Part shown: in pieces, positions 4,620 to 64,000 of the stretch | Layout of the letters: each line of letters opens with the position of its first letter | Numbering within the stretch: the stretch's first letter is position 1 | DNA from: Octopus sinensis | Taxonomy: Eukaryota | Direction: 5' to 3' | Length of the DNA stretch: 64,000 nt | NCBI RefSeq assembly: GCF_006345805.1 | Contig: NC_043006.1 | Location: 93,806,001 to 93,870,000, forward strand | Position numbers and translations under genes: made by a program | Notes under the pieces: model-generated | Databases searched by the model: none | What the model saw: only the letters and a program-made list of their open reading frames with translations | Told to the model about the DNA's origin: nothing

Positions 4620-5860
4620 GCTACTTAGAGAGTTGAACGTTTAAAGAGACATCAATATAGCTGGGACAAAAAGGAAAGGAGTATCTTCCCGTGCGATCAC
4701 CCTGATGAAATCGAGTGTGTGTGGCAAACTGGTTGAAGATGAACAGATGAGAGGAACATAGATGAACGTGTAGTGAATTTGAACATAGAAAACTAGAGAA
4801 GCAACCTAAGAGGAACTGTTATGGGTTTATTCTGGATTTCGAAATGGAGATGAAAGTCGAATAGTTACCGAACAGAAGTTTGGATCGTTATCAGAGAAGG
4901 GGCAAAAGGAAGTTTCCTTTGAAAAGACTTAATAATGACTATAACACGCGTACACTGTTTCCGTTGAATATCATCACCTGTAAGCTATGTCTCGTCCTTT
5001 GGATTTGCGTCACCAAAACGGAAAGCCAACTCTTCCGGACTTTGTAGAAAGGGAGGATCTTTTGCAGTTGTCTCACAATGATCTCAATTCGACGTCTTTG
5101 CTGAAACGCACACACGCGTTGAAGACACTGCATCCTCAGATATAACTCAATATAAAATCAACGCTAAATCCTTCTGCAAAGACTTTTTTTCCTGGTTCAT
5201 ACATGTGACATATCTGTCATATGAAATCAAATGAAGACCGAGAATTGATATCTCTATCTGGAATGTTGTAGTTGATTGGACAGTAATTACATCATAATAC
5301 ACAGGGCTAGTCGAAGGAGATACACGAGTGAGGTTTACTGGGAGGTTGATGAGGACGATGAACTGTTGGTCACGTTGTGCATCAACGGGGACAAGTTGTG
5401 AAATTGCTTCCAGTTGATTTTCCGTCCGTCCATTATGAAAACTTCCAGATATATATGTTCTAGTAGTAGCACTGGATGGTAAAACAAATTCCTCACATGG
5501 TGCTTGCCATAACATCAGAGAAAGCAATCAGAAATACCCAGGATGCAATACCATTGATGAAACTGTTTCATTCTCGTTTTATATGTGCCTGCGCTACATT
5601 AAACTTATGTTTATGCAGAAAAGTTATAGAGTTGTGTTGCACGAGTAAGATTGTGACCCAGGCCAATCCTAAACACCGTCTCCCTGAATTTATTTAACAA
5701 AGAAACTGGAGCATGGTACTTTGTGAATACAGAAAATGTGGGAGTGTGGTGAACGAGGCAAAAAAATTTGAGGTCAAATGCAAGCCGTATTCGAGTATTA
5801 TTTGAATAGGAACTGAGTGGGAGGAAAAGAGACTTTCCTTCTAATATTATTTACGAAAGA
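4620..5860 (-). mobile_element. Highly decayed CR1/L2-group LINE, RT C-terminal half and 3' end
   Basis: Remnants such as SPVYYDVITVQSTT..ISILGLHL and a C-terminal ...FKRS fit L2/CR1 RT tails; many stops and frameshifts. Confidence 0.45.
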
Positions 5861-35421: not shown

Positions 35422-35521
35422 NNNNNNNNNNNNNNNNNNNNNNNNNNNNNNNNNNNNNNNNNNNNNNNNNNNNNNNNNNNNNNNNNNNNNNNNNNNNNNN
35501 NNNNNNNNNNNNNNNNNNNNN
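35422..35521. other. Assembly gap (100 N)
   Basis: Run of N. Confidence 1.
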
Positions 35522-35639: not shown

Positions 35640-35881
35640 CATTATAGTACTCGGAGCCTGTATGACTAAGGTCATTATTTATGAAGCCACCGTAAATTCT
35701 ACGAATGCTAAGAACAGTTTTACCCAAGAGATATGTGGGTCTCACAGAGGGAAATCTCAGAGCAAGATTCAACAATCACACCTTAAGATTCAGACACTGG
35801 AATAAACGGAAGACTATCCACATATCCTGTTATATATGGTTCTTAAAAGAACAAGGTACCAACTACAGGATTTACTGGAAA
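35640..35881 (+). mobile_element. Penelope-like element GIY-YIG endonuclease fragment
   Basis: KVIIYEATV..RYVGLTEGNLRARFNNHTLRFRH..ISCYIWFLKEQGTNYRIYWK. Confidence 0.85.
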
Positions 35882-35889
35882 AGTTCCTT

Positions 35890-38450: not shown

Positions 38451-38459
38451 TGGGAGATA

Positions 38460-39689
38460 TTGGGGTGGCAACTAAGTTCCCACCGTTTTTTTTAATTTTG
38501 GAATTTATCGTGTTTTTAAATTTTGAAATCTATTTTTTTCGAGAATTCTATTTTTGAATCATTTTGGAATTTTTTTTTCTAGTTAATTTTACTTAATTTT
38601 TGTTTATTTTCAGATCATTAAAATGGAATGTCAAGTTAAGAAAAACGAGCATTTTCGACACCTCCTTCTTTTTGCTTTTAATCAAGGTTCTAAGGCCGCA
38701 AAAGCTGCTCGCGACATTTGTGAGTTGTATGGAAAGGGTGCCATAGCTGAAAGAACCGCTCTTGATTGGTATGCCAAGTTCAAAAATGGAAATTTTGACT
38801 TCAAAGCCGCACCTCTTTCTGGCCGTCCAGTTGAGTTCGATGAAGAGCAATTAAACCAACTTTTGCACGAAAATTCTCGTCAAACAACAAGGAAACTGGT
38901 AGAGAAAATGGAATGCTCCCACAGTGCTATAAAGAAGCATCTTCACTTGATAGGAAAGGTTCAGAAGTATGGAGCATGGGTTCCGCATGGTTTAAGTGAT
39001 AACAACAAAATCAGTGAGCCACAATCTCCGCTAGTTTGCTTGCTCGTCACTGCTCAACTCATGGACACAAGCAACGATTTCTATACCAAATCGTTACTGG
39101 CGACGAAAAATTGGGCCTGTACATCAATATGAAGCAGCGCAAGGAATGGCTTTGCCCCGGTAAACAAGCGACGCCGAGCGTGAAACAAGATCTTCGCCCG
39201 CGTAAAAAGATGTTGTGCGTATGGTGGGACTGGGAAGGGATTATCCATTAGGAATTACTTGAACGGAACCAAACGGTCAACGCGGAACTCTATGTTCAAC
39301 AGATGGAGCGACTCAACATGGCTATATCATGGAGTTCTTCTGCTGCACGACAACGTCCACCCTCATATCGCCAATATGACCAAGGAAGCCATTCAAACGC
39401 ATGGCTGGAAAGTGCTGCCACACTCGCTGTACTCTCCTGATTTGGTACCAACGAATTACCGCCTCTTTCAACTTCATTCAAACGCTATGCGCGGAATTTC
39501 ATTCAATAATGATTGAGAGCATGGTTATATCAATTTTTTGAGTCGAAATCGGGTGATTTCTACCAACGAGGTATTGAAAATCTTGTTGAACGTGGAAAGA
39601 ACAAGGCGAATACATTATTGATTAATTAGTTGTTATTTTCTATTAAACCTTTCAAAAAGTTTAAATTTTAAAAAACCGCGGGAGCTTAG
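38460..39689 (+). mobile_element. Mariner (DD34D-type) transposon, pseudogenised
   Basis: ORF from 38623 (MECQVKKNEHFRHLLLFAFNQG), WVPHGL, IVTGDEK, HDNVHPH, YSPDLVPTN; left TIR after TA, partial right TIR. Confidence 0.9.
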
Positions 39690-46328: not shown

Positions 46329-46485
<157 letters not shown>

Positions 46486-46500
46486 TATATATATATATAT

Positions 46501-46807
46501 AATTAGTGAATGGAAGAAATGGAGTTGAACGAAGATTGTACAGAATTCCTTTTATTACATTCTACACATGTTTCAAAGGCCACAATTTTCCAAATTCTGA
46601 TTAAATAAGGATACCATATTGCAGCTTTCTCTTCAGGAAAAACCAGGAATTACGTTGTCAGAACAAAACAAAACAGAGGCGCAGCAAAGCAATTCGAACG
46701 AGGACGCTCCTTAAGAGCCCATGGTTAAACTTTGAAACATGTGTAGAATGTAATAAAAGGAATTCTGTACAATCTTCGTTCAACTCCATTTCTTCCATTC
46801 ACTAATT
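46501..46807. mobile_element. Foldback with identical 78-bp arms in (TA)n, containing a hammerhead-like core
   Basis: 46501-46578 is the exact reverse complement of 46730-46807. Confidence 0.85.
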
Positions 46808-46957
46808 ATATTAAACCTCAATTATCCGCACCAACGCACGGTTGCAACACCATATGGTCTTATCTCCAACCGTGTTTTTTTCTGCTGTGATTTTTGCTAC
46901 CCAGGTATCGGTTAAACTTTTGAATAATCTGTAACAAGAAAATTCATCTTTCCCTTT

Positions 46958-47043
<86 letters not shown>

Positions 47044-49212: not shown

Positions 49213-49447
49213 TTTATTTCTTTATTGCCCACAAGGGGCTAAACACAGAGATGACAAACAAAGAGAAACAAAGTGATTAAGTCGATTACATCGACCCCCG
49301 TTCGTAACTGGTACTTTCTTTATCGACCCCGAAAGGATGAAAGGCAAATTTGACCTCGGCGGAATTTGAACTCAGAAACGTAACGGCAGACGAAATGCCG
49401 ATAAGCATTCTGCCCAGCGCGCTAACGTTTCTGTCAGCTCGCCGCCT
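49213..49447 (-). mobile_element. SINE family A (full length, Tx1-like tail)
   Basis: GGCGGCGAGCTG head, Meta-like core, tail TTTGTCATCTCTGTGTTTAGCCCCTTGTGGGCAATAAAGAAAT. Confidence 0.85.
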
Positions 49448-49463
49448 TACATATTCTTTGACT

Positions 49464-49571
49464 GTTTCCGTGGTAACAGATAATAAACTGACCAATCAGG
49501 TGTATATGAATCGATATGCTCTCAGCACAATCCCCATAGAAAGAAACCGGAAGCGGAAGCCATACCGGAAT
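49464..49571. promoter_or_regulatory. Candidate promoter: RFX X-box, CCAAT box and tandem ETS sites
   Basis: GTTTCCGTGGTAAC at 49464-77, GACCAATCAG at 49490-99, CCGGAAGCGGAAG at 49547-59, CCGGAAT at 49565-71. Confidence 0.45.
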
Positions 49572-50032: not shown

Positions 50033-50134
50033 GGAGACAACGAATATCTAAACTCGATTTTGGATCTAGAATCCTTTTTTCTCAACGTCCTCCGACTCAA
50101 AGACGACATAACTATACTACGCTCTTCTTTTATG
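50033..50134 (+). other. Probable 5' UTR exon of the TMIE-like gene, ending in the start ATG (50132-50134)
   Basis: Acceptor ttttcttcctcaaaatag, donor ATG|GTAAGT, a single ATG at the exon end, phase 0 into 57345; the frame is also open throughout, so it could be fully coding. Confidence 0.5.
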
Positions 50135-50182
50135 GTAAGTATTCATATTTCTTTCATATACATACATACATACGCACGTACG

Positions 50183-50267
<85 letters not shown>

Positions 50268-50867
50268 CACTTCACTGTGTCTCTTTCACTTTTTTCGCCC
50301 CTCCTTAATTCTTCTATCCCTCTACCTCTACCTCTCTCCCCACGTGACCGGTGTTCGGCAGGCTTGACCTTTCTTTCTTGGTTCGACTACCATCCGTTCA
50401 GACATCTATATTCCTCCCTGTGCCTGTGAAATCTTATGCCCCTGTCGTAAGGATTTACTTCCACACACCAGCTAAATTTAATGCGTCGTTAGTCGAAAGA
50501 CACCAGTTGTTATGTCCTGTTAATTGCATTTGCATTTGTGTAGCATTTCTCTGTATTTCTTTTCGTCTTTGTTTTCGTATACATTCGCTGCTTTCTTCAA
50601 ATGAATATAGTGCTGTTAGCTTAGTTTTCTCTTGGTGTTGACTAGATTGGATCAATTTCGAGTATAACTAGCCGAAATTGCAAAGATAATCTGGAGCTCG
50701 ACTGAGGGAAGAAAACTCCGAATGACCCGTACATGTTTTCTTTGTATCACGTATCTGGATGCTTTGCGTTCTTGTCCCATTTATGTATTTTATATATATA
50801 AAATGTAGCGGTGTACGTGCACCTTACTCTCTCTCTCTCCCTCACTCTCTCTTTCTCTCTCTCTCTC

Positions 50868-50938
<71 letters not shown>

Positions 50939-51069
50939 ATATGAAGATAGATAGATACATACATACATTCATACATAAATACATACAAACATACATACAT
51001 ATATATATACATACATATATATATATGTGTGTGTGTATATATATATATATGTGTGTATATATATATACT

Positions 51070-51102
<33 letters not shown>

Positions 51103-51122
51103 TATATGTATATATATATACT

Positions 51123-51168
<46 letters not shown>

Positions 51169-51816
51169 TGCGTGAGAGAGACAGAGAGAAGAAGAAAGAA
51201 AGATAGATGTGGAGTCTTGTTTTCTGTTTTGATTAATGCATGCAGACACGCAGACCACACATACATCTTTTATTTTTTGTCTCATACATATGTCAGGCTT
51301 TATACTGCGGCCATGCTGGGGCACCACCTTGAAGAATATTAGTTAAAGGAATCGAACTTAGTACTTTATTTGTTTTTTATCATGTGTGTGTGTGCGTGTG
51401 TGTGTGTGCGTGTGTGTACGTGATTGTGTGTGTGTACGTGTGTGTGTGTGTGTGTACGTGCGTGTGTGTGTGTATGTGTGTGTGTGTGTGTGTGCGTGTG
51501 TGTTATTTTATTCTTTTACACTTTTACTTGTTTCAGTTATTTTGAGTGCGGCCATGCTGGTGCACATATACGACAGGCTTCTTTCAGCTTCTTTTACCAA
51601 ATCCTCCCACAAGGATTTGGACATCCCAAGTCTATAGTAGAAAATATTTGCCCAATGTGCCACGCATACGGACTGAACACGGAACCATATGGCTGGGAAA
51701 CAAACTTCTTATCATGTCTATCGGATCGTAGAGCTGTGTCTGTGTTTGTGCGCACCTCTGTATTCGCGTACCTGTGGTTTTGTGGCCATACATACATACA
51801 TACATACATACATACA

Positions 51817-51850
<34 letters not shown>

Positions 51851-51959
51851 CATACTATATACATACATACATACATACATACACACATACATACATACAT
51901 ACATACATACATACATACACGCACTCACACACGAACATTTATATTTTGATTTCAAATTT

Positions 51960-52152
51960 TGACACAAGGCCAGTAGTTTAAATGAGGAGGATGTTCGATG
52001 ACATCGACATCAGTACACAACTGGTACTTACTTTATCGACTCCGAAAGGGTGAAAATCGAAGTCGACCTCGGCGGAATTTGAACTCAGAACGTAAAGAAG
52101 GACGAAATGCCGATAAGCATTCTGTCTGGTGTGTGAGCCATTCTGCCACATC
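51960..52152 (-). mobile_element. SINE family A
   Basis: Meta-like core; inverted relative to 52224. Confidence 0.75.
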
Positions 52153-52223
52153 GCTGACCCACGTACAGGTGCGCTTGCGTCTGTATTTATATATTAGTAG
52201 TTAGAATATTTTGTTTGTAATAA

Positions 52224-52580
52224 GGCGGCGAGCTGGCAGAAACGTTAACACGCCGCGCGAAATGCTCAGCGGTATTTCGTCTGCCGCTACGTTCTGAGTT
52301 CAAATTCCGCCGAGGTCGACTTTGCCTTTCATCCTTTCGGGGTCGATTAAATAAGTACCAGTTACGCATTGGGGTCGATGTAATCGATTTAATCCGTGTG
52401 TCTATCCTTGCTTGTCCTCTCTGTGTTTAGCTCCTTGTGTGTAGTAAAGAAATAGGTTTTTCGTCTGCCGCTACGTTCTGAGTTCAAATTCCACCGAGGT
52501 CGACTTTGCTGTCATCCTTTCGTGATTGATAAATTAAGTACCAGTTACGTACTAGGGTCGATGTAATCAACTGCACCCCT
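52224..52580 (+). mobile_element. SINE family A full copy plus tandem partial copy
   Basis: Head at 52224, tail near 52456, body repeated from about 52458. Confidence 0.85.
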
Positions 52581-52724
52581 GTAATGTCAGAGACTTTAGA
52601 GCAATGTGACATTTGATTGCGTACGTATTCGTTCTAAGTTCGAATCCCGCTGCGATCGACTTTACCTTTCATGCTTTTCTTGTGTAGAAAAAAATAAGCT
52701 GTTTGTATACATAAATACATATAT

Positions 52725-52859
52725 TTTGCTTCCCAACCACATGGTTCCGGGTTCAGTGCCACTGCGTGGCACATTGGGCAAGTGTCTTCTACTGTAGCTT
52801 CGGGCCAACTAAGGCCTTATGAGTGAATTTTGTTGACGGAAAATGAAAGAAGCTCGTCG

Positions 52860-52924
<65 letters not shown>

Positions 52925-53165
52925 TGTGTGTGTGTGTGTATGCATGTGCGTACGTGCGTGTGTGTGTGTATGTTTCTGTGTTTGTCTCCCACCATCACTT
53001 GACAACTGATGTTGGTGTGTTTACGTCCCCGCAGCTTAGTGGTTCGGTAAAAGAACCGATAGAATAAGTACTAGGCTTACAAGGAATAAATCCAGGGGTC
53101 GATTTGTTCGACTAAAGGCGGTGCTCCAGCATGGCCGTAGTCAAATGGCTGAAACAAGTAAGAAA
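52725..53165 (+). mobile_element. tRNA-derived SINE, family B
   Basis: Family match. Confidence 0.85.
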
Positions 53166-53200
53166 ATGAAATAATATATATATATATAAATACATACATA

Positions 53201-54427
53201 CAGAGTGTTCCCCAAAATGTATACACACTTTAAATAATTATAAAGTAGGTGTTTATTAAAATACATTTCATTTTCAAGATTTAATAGAATTTAAAGACAT
53301 CATTTTATTGTTTTGTCAACGCCTGTTTTCAAAGTGATGTGCGTTCTGGTCTACGCACTGCTGACAACGAGAAGCAATGGAATCGCAAACATCACGAACC
53401 AATTCGTTTGGTTTTTATGTGCATTCTCGTTCAATGATTGCTCTCAAATCAGCGACTGTTGCAGATTTCATAGCGTAGACTTTGTCTTTTAGGTATCCCC
53501 ATAATAAAAAAGTCTAGTGGTGTGAGGTCTCGTGAACGCAGAGGGTATTCAACGAAACCCCTTCGTCCAATCCACCAGTTTGGCAGGATCTCATTAAGGA
53601 ATGATCTAGCATAGCGATGGTAGTGTGGGGGTGCCCCATCTTGCTGAAAATAAAACTCCTCATTTTCAAAGTCTTCTCTAATGCTTGGCATGACAGACTG
53701 TTGCAGCAAGTTCAAGTAAATGGGACCAGTCAGAGTAGCGTCAAAAAAGAATGGTCCAATTAATCCTTTTGATGAGAAGCCACACCACACTGTAACTCCT
53801 GGTAAATTAACATGGTGGGCCACCATAACATACGGATTCTCAGGTTCCCAGTAGGTGCAATTGTAGCAGTCAATTGAACCATTTAATTTGAATGTGGAAA
53901 GTGTGCATCTTCTGCACATCGTGCCGAGTACCACTTGCAATACTGTACTCTTCGATCTGGATCATTGTTACTAATAGCATGGACTAATCTTGGAAAGTAA
54001 CGTCTCCTTTGACAACGCTTCAAAATGCGTTGGACACGCGATTTTGATACACCTACCTCACGACTCGCTTGCTGCACAGATTTTTTGGGACTTTGGTGAT
54101 TCATTTCAAGTACTCCTTCTTGCTTTGTGGGGGTTGTCGATGTTCGTGGTATTCTTGAATTCTGAAGAGTTCCGTCGGCTTCAAACTTATCTCTAATTCG
54201 ACTGATGGCAAGTCGCGTTGGTGGATCTGTTTGAAACTCCCTCCTAAACTGTCTTTGCATTTCAACTGCCTTTTTACACTTTCAGTAGCATTTTAGGATG
54301 AATTTCCTTTGTTCAAAGCTTAGTCTGACTACCATCATTAATTCTAATGGGTTTCATCTGGAAAGAAAAAAAACATCAGTTGAGTTATCAGCTGCTAAAG
54401 TTGTATACATTTTTGGGGGACACCCTG
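53201..54427 (-). mobile_element. Full-length rosa (DD41D) Tc1/mariner transposon, frameshifted
   Basis: TIRs CAG(A/G)GTGT(T/C)CCCC..AAATGTATAC flanked by TA; QQDGAPPH...WIGRRG..LTPLDFF with 41 residues between the last two Asp. Confidence 0.9.
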
Positions 54428-54458
<31 letters not shown>

Positions 54459-54889
54459 GTTCTTGTGCATAGGTGTGTGAGGGCGTGTGTGTGTGTGTGT
54501 ATGTGTGTGTGTGTGTGTGTGCGCGCGTGTGAGCGTATATATAATTTCTTTCAACTCAAACTTTCAGTGATATTCCACAAGAGAGAAGCAAAAAAGAAAG
54601 ATAGAAGCATAAAAAAGAAAACGAAAGCAAAAACAACTGAAATAAACAATAAAAAAAAGAAAACGAGAAACATAAGAAAAAAGAAGATTATAAAACCCGA
54701 ACCCTAAAGTGAAGCGGAAGAATTAATTCATGGAATTTTCCAGAATTCTTGAATTGGTCCCAATGATTTCATATGTTAGCCTTCAGTTTGTCTGGAACGT
54801 GGAGTCCACAGAGAAGCAGGTAAATACCATATTTCTAATAACTCTATAGTCTTGATAGTTGTTTTTCTTCTTACAATTGTTGTCAAAAG

Positions 54890-55110
54890 ATGGCAAGCTG
54901 GCAGAATCGTTAGCACGCTGGACGAAATACTGCTTAGTATTTCGTCTGCCGCTACGTTCTGAGTTTCAATTCTGTCGTGGTCGACTTTGTTTTTCATCTT
55001 TTCGGGGTCGATAAATTAAGTACCACTGAAACACTGGGGTTGATGTAATCGGCTTAACCCCCCCCCCAAACACACACACAAATTTCAGGCCTTGTGCCTT
55101 TAGTAAAAAG
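54890..55110 (+). mobile_element. SINE family A
   Basis: Family match. Confidence 0.75.
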
Positions 55111-55295
55111 GATTATTGTTGTTATGAATATGCGTGGAATAGTGGTTAGTGTACTTGCCCCACGATCGTAATATCGTGAGTTGAGTTTCACCGTTTTGTC
55201 CACAGATTCTGCACTTATCACTTTCTGCTGTTTTGTTTTTTTATTTATTATTATTATTATCATTATTAATATTTCTGTTGTTGTTGTTATCATTA

Positions 55296-56892
55296 TTGTT
55301 TTATGTTTGACTTTTGCTTTACATTTGTGCAAGTTGGCTCCATGTGTCACCTAGAGACCTCAAGAGACAACAAGTTACAAGTTCATGTCTAGGGTGCCAT
55401 ATATTTGGTTTTGTACATAGTTTTTCTAGAGAATGTTTAAGAATTATTATTATTATTGTTGTTGTTTTATTGTCTTTGCACAGCTTCTAACACTGGAGAC
55501 GTGCTAGAGTGTCAGCTGTTCACTACCAGTGAACTAAGGTAACACCCCTAAATTTTCGAGCACCATCCGGAGTATTCCAGCAGTTCCAAGCAGTACTCTT
55601 TTCTGCAAATGCTCCACCCTTATTGCAACCCCTATTTGTTTCATGTACTTCTCAAGATTTTTACTCACTGTTCCCAGGGCTCCGACAATTATTGGTACTA
55701 CTGCCACCTTTTTCATCGACCACAACTGCTTAACCTCCCAAGCTAACCCGTTATATCCATCGACTTTTCTTTCTTCTTTATCGCATACCATATTATCAGC
55801 TGGGCATGCTATATCTATGATCCAGCATAGATTATTATTATTATTATTATTCTATGTTTGACTTTTGCTTTACGTCTGTACAAGTTGGCTCCAAGTCTCA
55901 CCCAGAGACCTCAAGAGACAACAGGTTGGAAGTTCATGTTGTTGTTATGCCTAGTGTGCCATATATTTGGTTTTGTATTTAGTGTTGTACTAGTGAATGT
56001 CTAAAAAAAAAGAATTATGTTTGTTTTAAAACTTAAGATGACATAGAAAGTATTTTGCGTAGGATATGAGCAGTTCCCATGAGCACTATCTTTTGAATTT
56101 CTGCCATTTTGGGCTTTCCTGGTTAGCAATCAGCCCCTTTTGATATCATTCCCAGGGCACCTATGACAACAGGTATTGTTTTAGTCTTCAGGTTCCACAT
56201 TTTGCTGATTTCTATTTCAAGATCTTTATATTTGCTCAGTTTTTGGTAGGTCTTGACAGATACGTTTATATCGATTGAGACAGTCATATCAATGAGGAGG
56301 CATGTTCTTTGCCTGAAGTCATTCAATATGATGTCTGGCCTATTTGCATCTATCTTTCTGTCAGTTTGAACGGTGAAGTTCCAGAGGAGTGAGATGTGGT
56401 CATTTTCAAGCACTGGAGGTGGTTTGTGTTCCCACCAGTTTTTTTCATGGGGCAAATCCAGGTTTTTACAAATTACCCAGTGAATATATTGTGCAGCTCT
56501 ATCATGCCTGTTGAGATACTCTGTAGGCGCTAGAAGACTGCACTTGGAGACAACATGATCAATATATTATTATTTATTTTTTTTTTTTATATTATTACAC
56601 AGGTTTTTTGTAGCTCCTGGAGCCTTGCATGCGTGGAGGGCTAACTACCTGCAGTCTACGGTACCATGCTTTCCATTCTTTTTAGCTAATACTTTCCTGA
56701 TTATTCTAGCCGTGCCAAGAAGGCAAACCTTTTGTAAGAGTTCAACTGGACATTCTATTCCAATTTCCTTTATATTGCCCATGGATGCCTTCTGACACTG
56801 TCCCCAAGGACCCAACAATAATTGGTACTATCTTCACCTATTTCATTTTCCATAGCCGGGCTATTTCGGACTTAAGATGATGGTATCTATCT
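55296..56892 (-). mobile_element. Cluster of four truncated RLE non-LTR retrotransposon (R4/Dong-like) 3' fragments separated by (ATT)n
   Basis: RHDRAAQYIHW..WWEHKPPPVLEN..NRPDII..IDM..KYKDL..IPVVIGALG; a second and third RLE tail (VPIIVGALG/VPIIVGSLG); a duplicated 3' UTR at 55296-55441 and 55852-56010. Confidence 0.85.
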
Positions 56893-56895
56893 TTT

Positions 56896-57269
56896 ATTAC
56901 CCCCGCCTTAGAGGAGGCGGAGGTATTGTTTTCAATCATTTGTTTGTTTGTTTGTGTGTAGACAAGAAATCTCAAGAACCGCTGGATGGATTCCGATGAA
57001 ACTTTCAGGGATGTTTGGACTCGTGACTAGCACGAACTGATTAGATTTTGGGACCGATTCCAGTACCAGACAAGGATTCTGGAATAATTTTCTGTTTTTT
57101 TTTAATTAATTTTTGAGAGCGGTCGGGTTCATTTTTAGTATTCACGTTTGTGAGAGTAGTCGAGTTTATTTCAGATATTCTCATTTTATAAATCATCTCC
57201 GGTTAATCGTTGAGAGGACATTGGTGTTACCTTGGCAAAAGTTTGTACCCTCTGAATGCTCTTTTTGTT
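56896..57269 (+). mobile_element. Non-autonomous Helentron/DINE-like element
   Basis: TTACCCCCGCC..GGAGGTATTGTTTT start, (GTTT)n, GATTCCGATGAAACTTT core, CTTGGC..TCTGAATGCTC end. Confidence 0.55.
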
Positions 57270-57344
57270 ATTATTATCATTATTCACCTCCACTTCGCTT
57301 TTAACTATTTTACTCCTTTCTAAATATTACTTTGTTATTTCTAG

Positions 57345-57483
57345 TCCCCCGATGCTGACACAACCCGATCGACGACAGTTCCACCCACAACAGAATTTTC
57401 GATCGAGTCGGTGGTCATACCAGAAGCGGGCCTCAGAATCTGGCATATTGCGGCATTAGCCATTCTGTTAATCTTGATCGTCA
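57345..57483 (+). CDS. TMIE: Coding exon of a TMIE-like (transmembrane inner ear) single-pass protein: SPDADTTRSTTVPPTTEFSIESVVIPEAGLRIWHIAALAILLILIV
   Basis: Strong acceptor ttactttgttatttctag and consensus donor GTCA|GTAAGT; ESVV..LRIWH plus a hydrophobic helix resembles vertebrate ETVVFWDMRLWHVVG (recalled); the phase-1 intron 14 codons after the Trp matches the recalled human intron position. The downstream exon was not found in the window. Confidence 0.65.
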
Positions 57484-57827
57484 GTAAGTAAGCATAGAAA
57501 CTTCCATAGAATGTTTGTTGTTGTTGTTTAACGTGGGGTCGGTTCTGATGGAGCAGGCTGAGGACGAACTGGGACCAGTCAGTCTTTTTAAATGTGCTTA
57601 GTCTTATACTTTTTATATGTTTCTGCCATTGGACTGCGGCCAAACTGGGGCACCGCACTCAAGCGTTTTATTCAAACAAATCGCCCCCAGTGTTTACGCT
57701 GGATTATTTTTTATTCTCGTACTTATTCTATTAGTCTCTTTTGTCGAACCGCTTTATTACACGGACGTAAGCAAACTAACACTAGTCGTCAATTGGTGAG
57801 ATAAATGGGTGGTAATGGTGGTGGGAA

Positions 57828-57878
<51 letters not shown>

Positions 57879-58289
57879 ATAAGAGTAAATAATTTCTTTA
57901 ATGGTTTTAAAAAACCAACAATTATTTACTGGTAGATTTCGGCATGTAAATATAACCATTAACGGTAGGAACTTCTGTGAAGTTCAGTGTATATATATTG
58001 TATATATATAAAAGGGACAAGCAACTGTTTTCGTTATTTATTCCTTCTGTTTTGCATATGTGAATTGCAGGGATATGTCGTATGTGGAGTCCCACTTGTA
58101 GAGAATAGAAATAAACAGTCTATGGCTGCCATTTCTAATTTTTTCGGTATGCGGCCAAGCAACCTGTTGCCTGCCCCTTTTATTTATTTATTATATATAT
58201 ATATATATATTCTCTCTAGTTTCAGCTCAGAGCTGCGGCCATGCTGGTGCACCACCGTTTTGTGCTACACTGTCATTACTAAGAGCCTC

Positions 58290-58465
58290 CTCTAATATGG
58301 CACTTGGTGGTTCATGGAGTTTGATATAGCTACCCTCATTTGCACCTCTTGCCGTGAGGTAGGTTCATCTGGGACTCTCGACAGGAAGAGGTCCAGCTTT
58401 GATTTAAAAACCCTTACATCTACTTTGTGCAAGTTCCCCAGACTCTTTGGGAGAATATTAAAATA
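58290..58465 (-). mobile_element. CR1/L2-group LINE 3' terminal fragment
   Basis: NILPKSLGNLHKVDVRVFKSKLDLFLSRVPDEPT. Confidence 0.75.
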
Positions 58466-59018
58466 TATTAAATATATATATACATAGATATATATAATAC
58501 ACACACTAACACACACACACGCACGCACACATATTAAGCAAAGACCGGAATATGTGGTAGCATCTTAATTCAGTTTTACATATGTTTAATTACAATATGG
58601 GAATTACATTTCTTCTGAATATAATCATCAATAATAACAAGAATATAAATATAACAAAATACATTTATAAACACATGGAACATCTCCCAGCTATAAATCT
58701 CCGGACATTCACTCAAAATGACATTTACAATAATATTATACGGCTGACCATTAAGAACATTGGGCACACAGACAAAATAACACTTTAGACTTGTAGGTCC
58801 GCTGGTGACTAATAAACTCAGATCTTGATGGACATACACACACGCACATACTGTACACGAAACTTTGCCTATTTTTTACACTAGCGATGTGTTTTCGAGC
58901 AGTTCACTTAAATTCTGCATGAAAAATGCGTTTTTACGGGGATAAAAATTATATATATATATATTCCCTAATAAATAAAATAATATATATATGTGTATGT
59001 ATGAATATACATACACAC

Positions 59019-59136
<118 letters not shown>

Positions 59137-59309
59137 TTATTTATTAGGGAATAAAAATTCCGGCGTCACAGGAATTCTCAAATAAGTTGAATTATTCTCG
59201 ATAAGGAAATACATGTCATTTAAAGATAGAAGTCCCCATGCAATTCATCAAATCCTAATATACATCACACCATATCATACAATTTTATTTTGATAGTTAC
59301 TATTTCAGT

Positions 59310-59578
59310 TCCAAATGCGTGGTACCTTGGGCAAGTATCTTCTACTATAGTCTCGGGCCGACCAAAGCCTTGCGAGTGGATTTGGTAGACAGAAACTGAA
59401 AGAAGCCTGTCGTATGTATGTATGTGTGTGTATGTGTGTGTGTGTTTGTCCCCCCCAACATTGCATGACACTCGATGCTGGTGTGTTTACGTCCCCGTAA
59501 CTTAGCGGTTCGTCAAAACAAACCGATAAAATAAGTAATGGGCTAACAAAGAATAAGACTTGGGGTCGATTTGTTCTA
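59310..59578 (+). mobile_element. tRNA-derived SINE, family B (truncated at both ends)
   Basis: Family match. Confidence 0.8.
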
Positions 59579-59579
59579 C

Positions 59580-59992
59580 CGTTATGGTAGTTGTTGTTGT
59601 TGTTGGAGTGATGATAGTTGTGTCGGCCTATTTTGCTGTGGTGGTTGTTTTGCTGTCACTGGTTATTGCTGTAGCTGCTGTTGTTGTAGTAGTTGTTGTT
59701 GTTGTTGCTGTTGTTGTTGTTGTTGTTGTTGTTGCTGTTGTTGTTGTTGTTGTTGCTGTTGTTGTTGTTGTTGTTGTTGTGTTGTTGCTGTTGTGGCTAT
59801 TGTTGAGTTAGTTGTGATGAGTGATGGTGGTGGTGGTGGTGGTGGCGGCATCCTGTTTTGCTGTGGTGGCTGGGGTTCTCGTTGTATCTGCTGCTGTTGT
59901 TGCTGCTGGAGCATATTGTTGTTGTTGTTGTTGTTGTGGTGGTGGTGGTGTGGTGGTGGTCGTCGTCGTCGTCGTGGTGGTCGTGGTCGTGG

Positions 59993-60024
<32 letters not shown>

Positions 60025-60030
60025 GTGGGG
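59580..60030. repeat. Compound (GTT)/(GGT)/(GTC)/(GGC) triplet repeat region
   Basis: Direct reading; open for 147 codons on the - strand. Confidence 0.9.
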
Positions 60031-60119
60031 CTGGTGATGTTGACGGCGGCCTGTTTTCCTGCGGTATTTGCTTATGCCGTTCCTGTTTTGATATATCTAT
60101 TTTAGATTATCCATCCTGT

Positions 60120-60400
60120 TAATCCCACCAACGACACGAACAACGTTTCAACGATCCCCGAACCCGCCGCGCCCCACTCCCGTCCACCCCCGCCCTGTCT
60201 CGTTTCACCCTTATTCCACCCGTTACCTACAACAGCCAAGCACACACACGCGCACACACACACCGTCGCCTGCCGGCCGCCATCCTCCACCTTCCGGCTT
60301 ACAAATGCCAATATGACGAAACGGACCCTCGACAAATGACCTGACCCCTTCATTTATCAGACATTTTCGGTGAGGCGGGGTGGGGAATGGCTCGAGGGTA
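60120..60400 (-). promoter_or_regulatory. CpG-rich promoter-like island
   Basis: Locally GC/CpG rich; CCGGAAG (60291-97, -), YY1-like GATGGCGGC (60276-84, -), donor AG|GTAACG at 60227/60226 (-). Confidence 0.3.
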
Positions 60401-60463
60401 TTGACTGCAATATCACAGGGTAACTTTTCAAAGGGTTATTATTATTGTTGTATATAATAGTGG

Positions 60464-60506
<43 letters not shown>

Positions 60507-61339
60507 GGTGGTACGTTTGTGTTTTATACACTATGGTCCACTAACATTATTTCAACACTGTTACCATTATTTACAAAATCTGTGTGTTGACTCGTTCCTT
60601 ATACATATGTATCACGTGATCGCGTGATCCACCAGCCTACCTGAAGTTGTTATACATCGCTGGTTACAATGCGCTTTTACATTGTCTTTTTTTTAGCTTT
60701 CGAGTGATACCACCCCGCTGGCTAGGTGAGCATGACCTAGGTGAGCCTGATTGGAAAGCTATTCCATCCAGGGTGGTGACCCATTGACAGCTGAGTGGAC
60801 TGCAGCGACGTGAAATGAAGGATTTTGCTCAAGAACCCAAAGCGCCACCCGGTCCGGGAATCGAACTCATGGAATTGCGATCATTAGTGCAACACCCTGG
60901 CCACTAAGCTACGCACCTTCACACACAGGTGTCTGTGTGAGTGTGTATGTTTGTGCGCCTGTGTTTGTGAGTGTCTATGTATGCATGTATATATGTATGT
61001 ATATATGCATGATATGTATGTATGTCATTATTCAGTTTTATTTCAAGATTTCTTGCCAATAGAGAAAGAACCGGTTTCTAACCTAGATCCAAGGTTCCTT
61101 CATTGGAATTTCAACATCAACAACAGGATATGTATGTATGTATGTTTATAATCATATATAGCTTTCATATTGCCTGTCCCACTCCTTTAACTTTTTTATT
61201 TTACATGTATGTATATGTGTGTATGTATGTGTGCGTGTGTCACACACACGTGACACACTCACACACGCACGCGCGCAGAGAAAAATGTATGTATGTATAC
61301 CTATATCGTCTATATGAATGCATTTATATATATATATAT

Positions 61340-62320
61340 ACTAGCATTATGACCCGTCGTTGCCGAGTCAAAGTGCTAGTGCATGTATATATGGTTATAT
61401 ATATGTGTACATATTACATGTTCATCTATATATATACATCTACACATAAAATACAAAATACAAAGTTATATCTTGATATCGCTAGTGATAACAATACTCA
61501 AAATATATAACAGACTGGAATTGTTAGCCCGTCTCTTGCAATTTCGATCAATTGTATCTTGTCCTCCCTCTTGTATAGAAGTGTGGCTACAACCCAGCCT
61601 ACTTCAACTTCTGGGGGGGGGGGGCATTTTTAATTTTTATCCGGCACGTCCTACGTCCCAGATATAAAGGTAAAAATAAAATATTTCCACTTTGCAAGTT
61701 CGAGTCTATAGTGGCGAATTTACCGCCTCTTTCATAGTCGCACCAAGACACTTTTCGATGATGCTTTCCTCCATGTGTTCAAATATTCTTTTTTCTCTAC
61801 ATTATATACTTTATAGACAATAGTCTTTTCTTTAATTTCATTTTTTATTATCCATCTGGACTATTCCATTTCTGCATGCTAATTTTATTTTTAATTTATT
61901 CCCATTCATGTGAAACCACTTATTCAAGTTCAAGTCATTGATGCAATTTTATACCAATTGCTATTTTTACTTTTGTTATGTTACGATTATATTATACTTT
62001 AGTTTGATTTTAATTTTTACTTACTACATATAATTCAATTGTTATTATTATTTTTATTGTTAAAGTGAAAGTATCTGACATAAAATAGAGAAACGTTTTT
62101 GTTTCACTTTTAACACGTAATACAGAAATAGTGGAGAAGATATGATATTGCTATGGGCTCGCTCTAGGCAAGAAGTTGAACATTTTTTTTGCCCATGAAA
62201 CTACATGGAACTTAAGTAAGGCATGTGTAAAATTTGAATGAAATTGCTTGAGTAGTTCTCAAGTTTTAGGAAAACACACAGACAGACAGACACACACACA
62301 TTCTCAGTTTTACATATATA
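61340..62320 (+). mobile_element. Non-autonomous Helitron/Helentron-like element
   Basis: ACTAGC..ACCCGTCGTTGCCGAGT start; AAATTTGAATGAAATTGCTTGAGTAGTT..(CAGA)n end. Confidence 0.5.
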
Positions 62321-62546
62321 TACATAAATATATATATATATATACGAGAGATCAATACCTCGAAACTCGAGTCCGTGTGTATCATAAGTTGAAGACGGGA
62401 AGGATGACTTCCCTTTGCAAATACTGACAGGACACAGAAAGTGTGTCTATGGCCAGCTGGAGGAGTGTGTCCTCCTGGGGCTAAAAACTACAGTAGCATC
62501 CACCCTTAGGGGTTAGCCATATTGAAATGGCAAAAATACGTCACGT

Positions 62547-62580
<34 letters not shown>

Positions 62581-62659
62581 TATACATACATATATATATA
62601 TATACAGACACACACACACAAACACACATATACACACACACATAAAGGTTCTTAATGGT

Positions 62660-62676
62660 TGGTAGATAGATAGATG

Positions 62677-62746
<70 letters not shown>

Positions 62747-62767
62747 CAGACAGACATACAGACAGAC

Positions 62768-62827
<60 letters not shown>

Positions 62828-62870
62828 GGACGGATGGACAGATGGATGGATGAATGGATGGATGGATGGA
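62660..62870 (+). repeat. (GATA)/(GACA)/(GATG)n tetranucleotide array
   Basis: Direct reading. Confidence 0.95.
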
Positions 62871-63064
62871 TAGAAAAGACTTAGGCCGTGTGTGGTCTCA
62901 AAACCATCATGCGTTGAGACAGTCATAAAACTGTAATCATGATGTATAACCATATATACTCATGTTTCAACATACATTAATAACAGCAGGATATCGTTTT
63001 GCAGATCATCACTAACCTGCTTTTTCACATACCATCACTGCATTCTCTCTCTCCCACTCGCTCC

Positions 63065-63132
<68 letters not shown>

Positions 63133-63286
63133 TTTCCATTTATCTATCTATATATCCATACATATATATATATCACTGTGATCGACCAGACTATCAGATG
63201 TTGCTACACATCGCTGGTCACAATGCGCTTCGCATTGTTTTAGCCTTCAAATGACGTCACCCCGCTCGCTAAGCGAGCAGGCCAAT

Positions 63287-63336
<50 letters not shown>

Positions 63337-63404
63337 AATTAATTTACTCTGCTATGTATTGAGTACCTTGTTTGCTGTGGTTAACCCCGACTCAACCCGG
63401 GACC

Positions 63405-63462
<58 letters not shown>

Positions 63463-63849
63463 GAGAGAGAGACAAGATCGAGCAAAGTACTTAGCGGCAG
63501 ATAGAGATGCTGCTAGTTTCAAATTCTACCGAGATCGACTTTGCTTCTCTTCCCTTCGGAATCGATAAAATAAGTGCCATTTGAACTCTGGGATCGATGT
63601 TATTTCCGGCCCTTATAATTTCTGACTTTGCGCCAAAGTTTTGTATCTACAGTTATTGCTCAAGCTTGGGTCTGCTTTGCTGGCCACTGCTATCGAACTG
63701 AAGAGGGGTTGTTATAGTTTGGAGACTTCTAAGCTGTAAGACAAGAATGCACCATATACGACGGCATAAAATGTGTACTAGCATATCAAACGCACTCACA
63801 ATTCCAGTAGCGCATAAGCAGGAGAGAAAAGCGTTTTTATATATTTAAG

Positions 63850-64000
63850 ACTAGCAGTATCGCCCGGCGTTGCTCGGGTTTGTAAGGGAAATAACTATAT
63901 AAGCATTTTTAGAGAGTTATAGCCAAAAAATAACAAAAAATGCATTAAAAATGGAAAAAAAAATTATGGTAATTTTTTTTAAATCGTTGACTCATCGTAG
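63850..64000 (+). mobile_element. 5' end of a non-autonomous Helitron-like element (runs off the window)
   Basis: ACTAGCAGTATCGCCCGGCGTTGCTCGGG start, similar to 61340. Confidence 0.5.

What the first reader, a model, noticed from the sequence alone, without database searches (positions are those of the whole stretch)
50033..57483. Probable cephalopod TMIE orthologue with ATG-only first coding exon and no signal peptide
Splicing 50134 to 57345 gives MSPDADTTRSTTVPPTTEFSIESVVIPEAGLRIWHIAALAILLILIV: a Thr/Pro-rich ectodomain, then the RxWH motif and transmembrane helix typical of TMIE. The phase-0 entry and phase-1 exit 14 codons after Trp match the human gene as recalled from memory. TMIE is an established component of the hair-cell mechanotransduction complex and has been linked to nicotinic receptor function. 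This is relevant to statocyst hair cells and to nAChR-derived octopus chemotactile receptors (inference). The ORF track misses it because the frame has no internal start.
Basis: partly seen in the sequence, partly recalled or inferred. Interest (0 to 1): 0.75.

Follow-up and report, generated by a model that had tools for sequence, protein, structure and literature searches.

The report
Octopus TMIE gene, start exon unresolved
The window holds a real exon of the single octopus copy of TMIE, a small helper protein of the hair-cell touch and sound channel, but the claim that it starts with a bare ATG exon and has no signal peptide is not supported by any test I could run.

Summary
The sequence is as described. 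ATG|GTAAGT lies at 50132-50140. A strong acceptor precedes 57345, and exon 57345-57483 reads SPDADTT...GLRIWHIAALAILLILIV, entering in phase 0 and leaving in phase 1.

The best TMIE-profile hit in the 2.72 Gb genome lies 997 nt past the window end, on the same strand, in the matching phase. It encodes (I)VITCCCIDIRIPRTVQQIEK. The spliced protein scores 65.6 bits on Pfam TMIE (cut-off 27) and matches C. elegans TMIE from the TMC-1 complex structure. Intron positions match chiton and human.

The locus is Octopus sinensis LOC118765236, named "uncharacterized protein" but already carrying a PF16038 hit.

The ATG-only exon with no signal peptide is unproven:
- The motif is expected 1.5 times per window by chance.
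- Chiton, an unidentified transcript, worm, mouse and human TMIE all have a signal peptide. In chiton and human it is encoded by a phase-0 exon 1.
- A rival first exon (54730-54819, used in the O. vulgaris annotation) fits that architecture weakly.
- The RefSeq N-terminus is built from transposon-derived exons.
- No transcript data were reachable.

This is an ordinary orthologue with an unresolved 5' end.

The parts
57345..57483 (+). TMIE coding exon (139 nt). It encodes the Thr/Pro-rich ectodomain, the conserved GLRIW motif and the first 13 residues of the transmembrane helix after Trp. Phase 0 in, phase 1 out.
   Evidence: Sequence and translation. Spliced to the exon at window-equivalent 64997-65140 it gives Pfam TMIE 65.6 bits. 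Its length and phases equal those of chiton exon 2. Against O. vulgaris it has 3 synonymous and 1 non-synonymous change plus an in-frame 12-nt indel. It is single copy in the genome.
57484..64000 (+). Intron 2, which continues to window-equivalent 64996. Donor is GTAAGT at 57484.
   Evidence: No TMIE-like frame in 57484-64000. The next exon starts at G000:C10:93870997, which is L001 1523, after ...gtttgcAG.
50033..50134 (+). ATG is at 50132-50134 and the donor GTAAGT at 50135. Status: candidate only. It could also be a non-coding 5' exon or nothing.
   Evidence: For: the donor is the best of the 5' candidates I scored, the RefSeq exons and candidate 54730-54819 (5.9 bits); the DNA is single copy; the site is identical in O. 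vulgaris; CpG o/e is 1.3-2.3. Against: the motif is at chance frequency; the substitution-free run is not significant once clustered mismatches are collapsed (P = 0.26); T at -3; the product has no signal peptide.
54730..54819 (+). Alternative candidate first coding exon, MEFSRILELVPMISYVSLQFVWNVESTEKQ, ending CAG|GTAAAT in phase 0. The O. vulgaris annotation CAI9727473.1 uses it.
   Evidence: tblastn 100%. Donor 4.6 bits and weakly signal-peptide-like hydrophobicity. No scored repeat hit over 54560-54870. No substitutions against O. vulgaris, which is uninformative. Its length and phase resemble chiton exon 1 at 26 aa and human exon 1 at 31 aa.
53720..53850 (+). First coding exon of RefSeq model XP_036362873.1 (MGPVRV...GFSGS). 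It is probably a spurious or exonised transposon antisense frame.
   Evidence: tblastn 100%. It lies antisense inside a mariner-like transposase remnant with at least 150 scored copies and 5512 first-look candidates. Donor GTAGGT scores 1.5 bits. All 3 substitutions against O. vulgaris are non-synonymous. pLDDT is about 50.
56603..56660 (+). Second coding exon of the RefSeq model ((Q)FFVAPGALHAWRANYLQST), derived from a repeat.
   Evidence: It belongs to a repeat family with at least 40 scored copies at 80-89% identity and 1064 candidates. Donor GTACCA scores -1.5 bits. One synonymous and one non-synonymous change against O. vulgaris.
53449..54281 (-). Mariner-like transposon remnant inside the putative TMIE intron 1.
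   Evidence: Two minus-strand open frames. DUF4817 helix-turn-helix hit at 29.9 bits. Hundreds of degenerate copies genome-wide.

Best explanation
Window 57345-57483 is the second coding exon, in chiton and human numbering, of the single-copy TMIE orthologue of Octopus sinensis. The gene is LOC118765236, on the 105.9-Mb chromosome scaffold.

The conserved core is built from three pieces.
- This exon: ectodomain, the R-x-W motif and the N-terminal half of the transmembrane helix.
- A 144-nt exon 7.5 kb downstream, at window-equivalent 64997-65140: the rest of the helix, a CCC cluster, the DIRIPRT 'elbow' and a basic helix.
- Probably a short basic terminal exon at window-equivalent 69306-69343, encoding GRVTSNRRETQR*.

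By homology the protein should work as in worm and vertebrates. [quoted passage not shown] The Trp would contact the TMC TM1-TM2 loop. A juxtamembrane Cys would be palmitoylated and lie along TM8. The two elbow arginines would hydrogen-bond to TM6 and TM8. The basic tail would bind phospholipid. Together these would support localisation and gating of the mechanotransduction channel, presumably in statocyst and epidermal-line hair cells.

Shown here: sequence, gene structure, family membership, single copy, and presence of TMC-domain exons in the genome. Inferred: all function, tissue and partners.

The 5' coding exon is not resolved. The ATG-only exon at 50132 is one of at least three candidates. 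Comparison with other TMIE genes makes a missed signal-peptide exon at least as likely.
For: - A whole-genome scan with PF16038 gives one hit above cut-off (42.2 bits), 975 nt past the window end, on the same strand.
- The acceptor cag|TC there completes the phase-1 codon left by exon 2.
- The spliced product scores 65.6-67.1 bits against a cut-off of 27.
- PDB 7usw chain D (C. elegans TMIE) matches at E = 2.9e-9, aligning W25, C43/C44, R49 and R52. Their roles are described in PMC9605866.
- Invariant columns across mollusc and worm sequences are R32, W34, C52, C53, R58, I59, P60 and R61.
- Of the 6 hits to the exon-3 peptide outside the locus and its O. vulgaris orthologue, the 2 that I scanned, P0006 and chiton P0008, pass Pfam TMIE.
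- Chiton exon 2 is also 139 nt, with phase-0 entry and phase-1 exit at the 14th codon after Trp.
- In human, exon 2 is c.94-211, which gives the same phases, with codon 71 equal to W57+14.
- Exon 3 and the terminal exon are 100% identical in O. vulgaris.
- The exon 2 substitution pattern, 3 synonymous to 1 non-synonymous plus an in-frame indel, fits coding constraint.
- TMC-domain exons are present in the genome.
- The AF2 model has a confident helix over the transmembrane region.
Against: - No transcript or protein evidence was reachable. No octopus transcript-derived protein exists in the collections searched.
- The start codon and the terminal exon rest on gene models and splice consensus only.
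- The Pfam match covers profile positions 7-64 of 85, so the C-terminal part of the family model is not matched.
- The AF2 model is poor overall (mean pLDDT 58) and shows no elbow break.
- Function, tissue and partners are untested.
Confidence: 0.9

Rival explanations
1. Translation starts at the ATG at 50132-50134, which is the whole coding content of exon 1, and splices to 57345. The 107-aa protein has no signal peptide and inserts N-out through its single helix as a type III signal anchor.
For: - ATG|GTAAGT has the best donor score among the 5' candidates I scored: 5.9 bits, against 4.6, 1.5 and -1.5 for the rivals.
- The segment 49836-50140 is single copy, while its neighbours are repeats.
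- The ATG and donor are intact in O. vulgaris, and the site lies in the longest substitution-free run of the 20-kb comparison.
- CpG o/e is raised.
- The topology is feasible: a 33-aa acidic N-terminal segment and a strongly basic C-terminal flank (sequence; inference from the positive-inside rule).
Against: - The motif is expected 1.54 times per window by chance.
- The conserved run is not significant after collapsing clustered mismatches (P = 0.26).
- The Kozak context is poor, with T at -3.
- Chiton, the SRR8281663 transcript, worm, mouse and human TMIE all carry a signal peptide. In chiton and human it is in a phase-0 exon 1.
- Neither public gene model uses this exon.
Confidence: 0.3
2. 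The first coding exon is 54730-54819 (MEFSRILELVPMISYVSLQFVWNVESTEKQ). It would encode a weak signal peptide and end in phase 0, as in chiton and human. The 50033-50134 segment is then either irrelevant or a non-coding 5' exon. If that exon spliced to the possible acceptor at 54567, its ATG would be followed at once by TGA.
For: - The exon is used in O. vulgaris model CAI9727473.1 and is 100% present here.
- The donor CAG|GTAAAT scores 4.6 bits. It is the only candidate of 12-60 aa with a hydrophobic stretch that has a donor above 4 bits in the 21 kb upstream.
- The scored repeat hits cover only 54871-55000, so 54560-54870 looks single copy.
- At 30 aa and phase 0 it parallels chiton exon 1 (26 aa) and human exon 1 (31 aa).
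- A plausible acceptor, ctttcag|TGA, lies at 54567.
Against: - The hydrophobic core is weak. My hand calculation gives a best 10-residue Kyte-Doolittle mean of about 1.8, and there is a Glu inside it.
- The same O. vulgaris model contains an obviously spurious poly-Val/Gly exon and an intron read-through, so it is ab initio and unreliable.
- T at -3.
- There are no substitutions against O. vulgaris, so no test of coding constraint is possible.
- Chance candidates of this quality are expected at roughly 0.3-0.5 per 20 kb (my rough estimate).
Confidence: 0.3
3. The RefSeq model XP_036362873.1 is right. Translation starts at 53720 and runs through exons 53720-53850 and 56603-56660 into 57345, giving a 169-aa protein with a 63-aa N-terminal extension.
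For: - It is the current RefSeq prediction and maps 100% to the window.
- The weak splice sites it uses may mean that RNA-seq introns supported them. This is inference and could not be checked.
- The frame stays open in O. vulgaris.
Against: - Exon A is the antisense strand of a mariner-like transposase remnant with hundreds of copies.
- Exon B is part of another repeat family.
- The donors score 1.5 and -1.5 bits.
- Substitutions are 4 non-synonymous to 1 synonymous.
- The extension has no family hit and pLDDT of about 50.
- A 97-residue segment with no signal peptide would have to be translocated.
Confidence: 0.12
4. The locus is a decayed or non-functional TMIE remnant, or the match is a chance resemblance of a hydrophobic frame.
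For: No start exon could be proved, and no transcript-derived protein was found in the collections.
Against: - Two exons in the right order, strand and phase jointly score 65.6 bits.
- All residues known to be functional are intact.
- Splice sites are canonical.
- Exon 3 is identical in O. vulgaris and the exon 2 changes are mostly synonymous.
- It is the only TMIE locus in the genome.
Confidence: 0.02

Closest known systems
C. elegans TMIE (PDB 7usw/7usx/7usy/8tkp chain D; Jeong et al. 2022, PMC9605866)
   Same: Single transmembrane helix preceded by G-L-R-x-W. CC at the cytosolic end of the helix, where worm C44 is palmitoylated. An R-I-P-R-T elbow, equivalent to worm R49 and R52. A basic region downstream. 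E = 2.9e-9 over residues 29-79.
   Different: The worm protein has an N-terminal stretch of about 17 residues interpreted as a cleaved signal peptide, and only about 7 residues of mature ectodomain before Trp. The octopus exon encodes 32 ectodomain residues, and no signal peptide has been located. The tails are unrelated in sequence.
Human/mouse TMIE (DFNB6 deafness gene; four exons)
   Same: Intron positions match: a phase-0 intron before the ectodomain exon, and a phase-1 intron in the 14th codon after the conserved Trp (W57, codon 71). I derived this from c.IVS1-2_98del, c.92A>G in exon 1 and c.212-2A>C. The deafness residues W57, R81 and R84 have octopus counterparts.
   Different: Human exon 2 is 118 nt against 139 nt. 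Human exon 1 encodes a signal peptide with predicted cleavage at 28/29. The human tail has long Lys runs, while the octopus RefSeq tail is 12 residues with 4 Arg.
Chiton Liolophura sinensis XP_064614067.1 (P0008) and the unidentified transcript P0006 (Logan SRR8281663)
   Same: These are the closest sequences outside Octopus: 56% (P0006) and 45% (chiton) identity over the exon-3 peptide. They share T-rich ectodomain motifs (TRSTT / TIE(S/T)xV) and NK(K/Q)YxKE. Chiton exon 2 has exactly the same length (139 nt) and phases.
   Different: Both start with a clear hydrophobic signal peptide: MEDGVYYALSVCLLSITMCISTIG... and MKETILSTFFFLVIFLPIKTLSQ... In chiton it is a separate 26-codon phase-0 exon 1. 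The chiton tail is about 230 residues longer.
RefSeq XP_036362873.1 (O. sinensis LOC118765236, 'uncharacterized protein') and O. vulgaris CAI9727473.1
   Same: They are the same locus and its orthologue. Both contain exon 2 and exon 3, and both carry a precomputed PF16038 hit.
   Different: They have different N-termini, one transposon-derived and the other ab initio. The O. vulgaris model also has a spurious internal exon and a 3' read-through. Neither is named TMIE.

Membership tests
TMIE (Pfam PF16038) | Profile HMM score above the curated gathering threshold (27 bits) | tested here: met
   The spliced exons 2+3 score 65.6 bits, E = 3.5e-18. With the tail they score 67.1 bits. Exon 3 alone scores 41-42 bits. 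Exon 2 alone scores only 12.1 bits.
TMIE (Pfam PF16038) | Single transmembrane helix preceded by the conserved Arg-x-Trp (human W57, worm W25) | tested here: met
   GLRIWHIAALAILLILIVIVIT aligns to the worm helix PGLRLWMLIALVGGVLLIMIVIV. R32 and W34 are invariant in the five-sequence alignment. AF2 predicts a helix with pLDDT 76-90 over this stretch.
TMIE (Pfam PF16038) | Juxtamembrane cysteine(s) at the cytosolic end of the helix (worm C44, palmitoylated) | tested here: met
   The CCC cluster aligns to worm C43/C44, and C52 and C53 are invariant. Palmitoylation itself cannot be tested with these tools. The role of C44 is taken from PMC9605866.
TMIE (Pfam PF16038) | Elbow motif R-x-P-R-T with the two arginines that bind TMC TM6 and TM8 (worm R49/R52, human R81/R84) | tested here: met
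   DIRIPRT is present. R58, I59, P60 and R61 are invariant.
TMIE (Pfam PF16038) | Conserved gene structure: a phase-0 intron before the ectodomain exon and a phase-1 intron in the 14th codon after Trp | tested here: met
   Octopus. Chiton: exon 1 ends CAG|GTAAGC in phase 0, and exon 2 is 139 nt ending ATA G|GT. Human: exon 2 is c.94-211.
TMIE (Pfam PF16038) | N-terminal cleaved signal peptide (worm residues 1-17; mouse by N-terminal sequencing; human predicted cleavage at 28/29) | tested here: inconclusive
Candidate 54730-54819 is only weakly signal-peptide-like. Two other hydrophobic candidates turned out to be transposon sequence. No SignalP tool and no transcript data were available.
TMIE (Pfam PF16038) | Positively charged cytosolic C-terminal tail | tested here: inconclusive
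   Exon 3 supplies KTDRKLKLNK. The RefSeq terminal exon adds GRVTSNRRETQR, with a good acceptor and 100% identity in O. vulgaris. A Lys-rich alternative frame also exists. The profile does not discriminate between them, and the 3' exon lacks transcript support.
TMIE (Pfam PF16038) | Orthology: single locus, with best outside matches being TMIE proteins | tested here: met
   Only one place in the 2.72 Gb genome is above the cut-off. The exon-3 peptide found 8 proteins at E <= 0.001 among 1.84 billion: 2 octopus models of this locus and 6 others. Of these I scanned P0002, P0006 and P0008, and all three pass Pfam TMIE.
TMC mechanotransduction complex (functional membership) | Physical association with TMC1/2-type channel subunits in mechanosensory cells | not testable with these tools
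   All I could show is that TMC-domain exons (PF07810, 42-51 bits) exist in the same genome.

The most novel reading that the evidence does not exclude
Octopus TMIE, possibly in a form without a signal peptide, serves not only TMC channels in statocyst hair cells but also as an auxiliary subunit of the nicotinic-receptor-derived chemotactile receptors of the suckers. The precedent is its reported role with the alpha9alpha10 nAChR in vertebrate hair cells (reviewed in PMC8256367). Nothing here tests expression or interaction, so the evidence merely fails to exclude it.
Probability: 0.03. Interest if true: 0.8.

Novelty: new member of a known kind. Interest (0 to 1): 0.25.

Why it matters
Naming LOC118765236 as TMIE gives cephalopod sensory biology a handle on a core mechanotransduction component, for example for in situ probes and knock-outs in statocyst and epidermal-line hair cells. 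My full-text searches found no paper discussing a cephalopod TMIE gene. The work also shows that both public gene models have unreliable N-termini, one built from transposon sequence. Beyond that it is an expected orthologue of a family conserved from nematodes to humans. The one unusual claim, loss of the signal peptide through an ATG-only exon, is unproven, and would be only a modest curiosity if true.

Tried and rejected
1. Downstream exon inside the window. No Cys-cluster or RxPRT frame lies in 57484-64000. The exon lies 997 nt beyond the window.

2. Transcript-derived octopus proteins. Word-indexed searches covering 52-166 aa and 93-296 aa found only the two genome-annotation models. RefSeq gene coordinates could not be fetched.

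3. Candidate signal-peptide exon 46854-46904 (MVLSPTVFFSAVIFATQ, ending TQ like chiton). Rejected. It sits in a young repeat with at least 40 copies at 98-99% identity, and the insertion is absent at the orthologous O. vulgaris site.

4. Candidate 49395-49499 (MPISILPSALTFLSA...). Rejected. Its start lies in a SINE-like repeat with more than 11,000 first-look candidates.

5. The 478-nt substitution-free run looked striking. It is not significant once microsatellite-clustered mismatches are collapsed (P = 0.26).

6. Known RNA families at 49.3-50.6 kb. Only sub-threshold microsatellite-driven miRNA hits. The bacterial promoter scan is irrelevant here.

7. Taxon of the SRR8281663 transcript. No paper mentions the run and there are no close relatives.

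8. Choosing between the two possible terminal exons with the Pfam profile. No discrimination.

9. AF2 model from three sequences. Mean pLDDT 58, too poor for a fold search, so none was run.

Full report
**What is in the sequence.**
- At 50132-50134 there is an ATG followed directly by GTAAGT.
- At 57343-57344 an AG closes a pyrimidine-rich tract (...ctttgttatttctAG), and the exon begins TCC CCC GAT at 57345.
- The in-frame codon just upstream is TAG, and the frame holds no ATG.
- The exon ends ...ATC GTC A|GTAAGT at 57483.
- It therefore has 46 codons plus one base: phase 0 in, phase 1 out.
- My first reading of the 3' end (57485) was wrong.

- A six-frame scan of the whole 2.72-Gb assembly with Pfam TMIE (PF16038) gives one hit above the curated cut-off: 42.2 bits, E = 1.5e-7. 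It lies at C10:93870975-93871115 on the plus strand.
- The window is C10:93806001-93870000, so the hit starts 975 nt beyond the window end.
- The exon is L001 1523-1666, or window-equivalent 64997-65140. It follows gtttgcAG and starts TC GTC ATA ACT TGT TGT TGT....
- The lone A left by exon 2 plus TC makes Ile, so the phases fit.
- The join reads ...LILIV-I-VITCCCIDIRIPRTVQQIEKTDRKLKLNKQYIKELSRAASSSTPAPP and leaves in phase 1 at G|GTATGT.
- The predicted Cys cluster and RxPRT motif are present. The expected EIEA is QIEK.
- Exon 2 alone scores 12.1 bits. The spliced product scores 65.6 bits, E = 3.5e-18, covering profile positions 7-63 of 85.

**Family membership.**
- The spliced peptide matches C. 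elegans TMIE, chain D of the TMC-1 complex structures 7usw, 7usx, 7usy and 8tkp, at E = 2.9e-9.
- The alignment puts octopus Trp on worm W25, the Cys cluster on C43/C44, and the two arginines of RIPRT on R49 and R52.
- Jeong et al. (PMC9605866) describe the roles of these residues:
  - W25 contacts the TMC-1 TM1-TM2 loop.
  - C44 is palmitoylated and lies along TM8.
  - R49 and R52 hydrogen-bond to TM6 and TM8, and correspond to the human deafness residues R81 and R84.
- These residues are invariant in an alignment with three other lophotrochozoan sequences and the worm.
- An exhaustive HMMER search of 1.84 billion representative proteins with the exon-3 peptide found eight hits:
  - two octopus models;
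  - a chiton protein, Liolophura XP_064614067.1;
  - a snail protein from Batillaria;
  - four unnamed assembly-derived proteins.
- The ones I scanned pass Pfam TMIE.
- TMC-domain exons are present in the same genome.

**Gene structure.**
- In the chiton locus, exon 1 encodes MEDGVYYALSVCLLSITMCISTIGTQ and ends CAG|GTAAGC in phase 0.
- Chiton exon 2 is exactly 139 nt, the same as the octopus exon. It ends in phase 1 in the 14th codon after Trp.
- For human, three published mutation names place exon 2 at c.94-211: c.92A>G (E31G) in exon 1, c.IVS1-2_98delAGCCCAGinsC, and c.212-2A>C at the intron 2 acceptor (PMC8256367).
- That gives phase 0 in and phase 1 out in codon 71, which is W57+14.

**It is already a gene model.**
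- The 100%-identical hit P0002 is RefSeq XP_036362873.1, "uncharacterized protein LOC118765236 [Octopus sinensis]".
- It sits on a contig of 105,892,736 bp, the length of G000:C10. This identifies the organism.
- The record already carries a precomputed PF16038 hit.
- The O. vulgaris orthologue is CAI9727473.1, "hypothetical predicted protein".
- My full-text searches found no paper discussing a cephalopod TMIE gene.

**The 3' end.**
- The RefSeq model ends with GRVTSNRRETQR*.
- That exon starts at L009 5306 after a good acceptor (ttctattctctttcttgcgtttAG), and its stop codon ends at 5343, or window-equivalent 69306-69343.
- Exon 3 and this exon are 100% identical in O. vulgaris.
- A Lys-rich alternative frame about 0.8 kb upstream of it could also accept phase 1, behind a weaker acceptor.
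- That frame differs in O. vulgaris by an in-frame 3-nt indel and two non-synonymous changes.
- The profile does not choose between the two.

**The 5' end: the part of the claim that does not hold up.**
- ATGGTRAGT occurs once in the window, against 1.54 expected by chance.
- 23 ATG...|GTRAGT phase-0 candidates lie upstream of 57345.
- All TMIE proteins with a trustworthy N-terminus have a signal peptide:
  - the chiton, as a separate phase-0 exon 1;
  - the mRNA-like contig from SRR8281663 (MKETILSTFFFLVIFLPIKTLSQ...);
  - worm residues 1-17, and mouse by N-terminal sequencing;
  - human, with predicted cleavage at 28/29.
- I had first assumed the worm protein lacked a signal peptide. The paper corrected me.
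- The conserved architecture therefore predicts a short signal-peptide exon ending in phase 0, not a bare ATG.

**What the public models do.**
- RefSeq starts at 53720, uses exons 53720-53850 and 56603-56660, and then joins 57345.
- Exon A lies antisense inside a mariner-like transposase remnant. The remnant has a DUF4817 HTH hit and at least 150 scored copies out of 5512 candidates.
- Exon B belongs to another repeat family.
- Their donors score 1.5 and -1.5 bits.
- Their substitutions against O. vulgaris are 4 non-synonymous to 1 synonymous. For the true exon 2 the ratio is 1 to 3.
- The O. vulgaris model starts instead at the equivalent of 54730-54819 (MEFSRILELVPMISYVSLQFVWNVESTEKQ, donor CAG|GTAAAT at 4.6 bits).
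- That segment appears to be single copy, and its length and phase are chiton-like.
- Its hydrophobic core is weak, however, and the same model contains a spurious poly-Val/Gly exon and a 3' read-through.

**Other candidates and conservation.**
- Two further hydrophobic candidates proved to be transposon sequence: 46854-46904 and 49395-49499.
- The first sits in an insertion absent from O. vulgaris.
- It lies in the longest substitution-free run of the 20-kb comparison, 478 nt.
- Once mismatches clustered in microsatellites are collapsed to events, a run that long is expected in 26% of permutations.
- CpG o/e is raised there, but on a low-GC background.
- No Rfam family explains the block.
- The collections held no transcript-derived octopus protein, so the start cannot be settled here.

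**My estimates for the start.**

| Start model | Probability |
|---|---|
| ATG-only exon (reader) | about 0.3 |
| Exon 54730-54819 | about 0.3 |
| RefSeq N-terminus | about 0.1 |
| An exon not yet identified | the remainder |

**Mechanism.**
- Shown: sequence, phases, family membership, single copy.
- Inferred from the worm structure and vertebrate genetics: a single-pass, N-out auxiliary subunit on the periphery of each TMC protomer.
  - It would be held by the Trp contact, the palmitoyl-Cys and the two elbow arginines.
  - Its basic tail would engage phospholipid.
  - It would be needed for localisation and gating of the mechanotransduction channel.
- The tissue (statocyst and epidermal-line hair cells) and any role with nicotinic-type receptors are speculation.
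- The AF2 model from three sequences is poor (mean pLDDT 58).
  - It gives a confident helix over the transmembrane stretch.
  - It gives about 50 over the RefSeq N-terminal extension.

**Verdict.** This is a correct and useful naming of an expected orthologue that databases already hold unnamed. The unusual part of the claim is unproven and runs against the comparative evidence. Interest is low to moderate.

Noticed in passing
window 46429-46963: A roughly 535-nt insertion with a near-perfect inverted repeat of about 80 bp (46500-46578 against 46730-46808). It belongs to a very young repeat family with at least 40 scored copies at 98-99% identity and 856 first-look candidates. It is absent at the orthologous site in O. 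vulgaris, so it inserted, or was lost, since the two species split.
   Followed up: partly
window 57353-57354 (exon 2): O. vulgaris has an in-frame 12-nt insertion here (CCAAACAGGCTG) and a Pro-to-Leu change at codon 2 of the exon. Its ectodomain therefore reads SLDAAKQADTT where O. sinensis reads SPDADTT.
   Followed up: yes
window 59547-60590: Long trinucleotide and low-complexity tracts give poly-Cys, poly-Val, poly-Gly and poly-Gln frames. The O. vulgaris annotation calls part of the equivalent region as a TMIE coding exon (NNSGVVVVVVVVVGGGG), which is almost certainly spurious.
   Followed up: partly
L009 4476-4628 (window-equivalent about 68476-68628): A Lys-rich open frame (GPKTPKILRRQNTKRSKKKKGLKQ...) could accept the phase-1 exit of exon 3 behind a weak acceptor. 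It resembles the poly-Lys tails of vertebrate TMIE. In O. vulgaris it differs by an in-frame 3-nt indel. It may be an alternative terminal exon or just chance.
   Followed up: partly
window 35422-35521: A 100-N assembly gap lies about 22 kb upstream of exon 2. Sequence, and in principle an exon, could be missing there.
   Followed up: no
window 35846-39513 and 56126-56566: Further transposon-like open frames. There are long minus-strand frames at 35846-38529. A second mariner-like plus-strand frame lies at 38587-39513 (HLLLFAFNQGSKAAKAARDICELYG...). A retroelement-like minus-strand frame at 56126-56566 abuts RefSeq exon B. I recognised no other host gene among the long open frames I listed for the window.
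   Followed up: no
   Followed up: partly
window 54567-54570 with 50132-50134: If the 50134 donor were spliced to the plausible acceptor ctttcag| at 54567, the junction would read ATG|TGA, a minimal start-stop upstream ORF ahead of the ATG at 54730. This is pure inference and was not tested.
   Followed up: no
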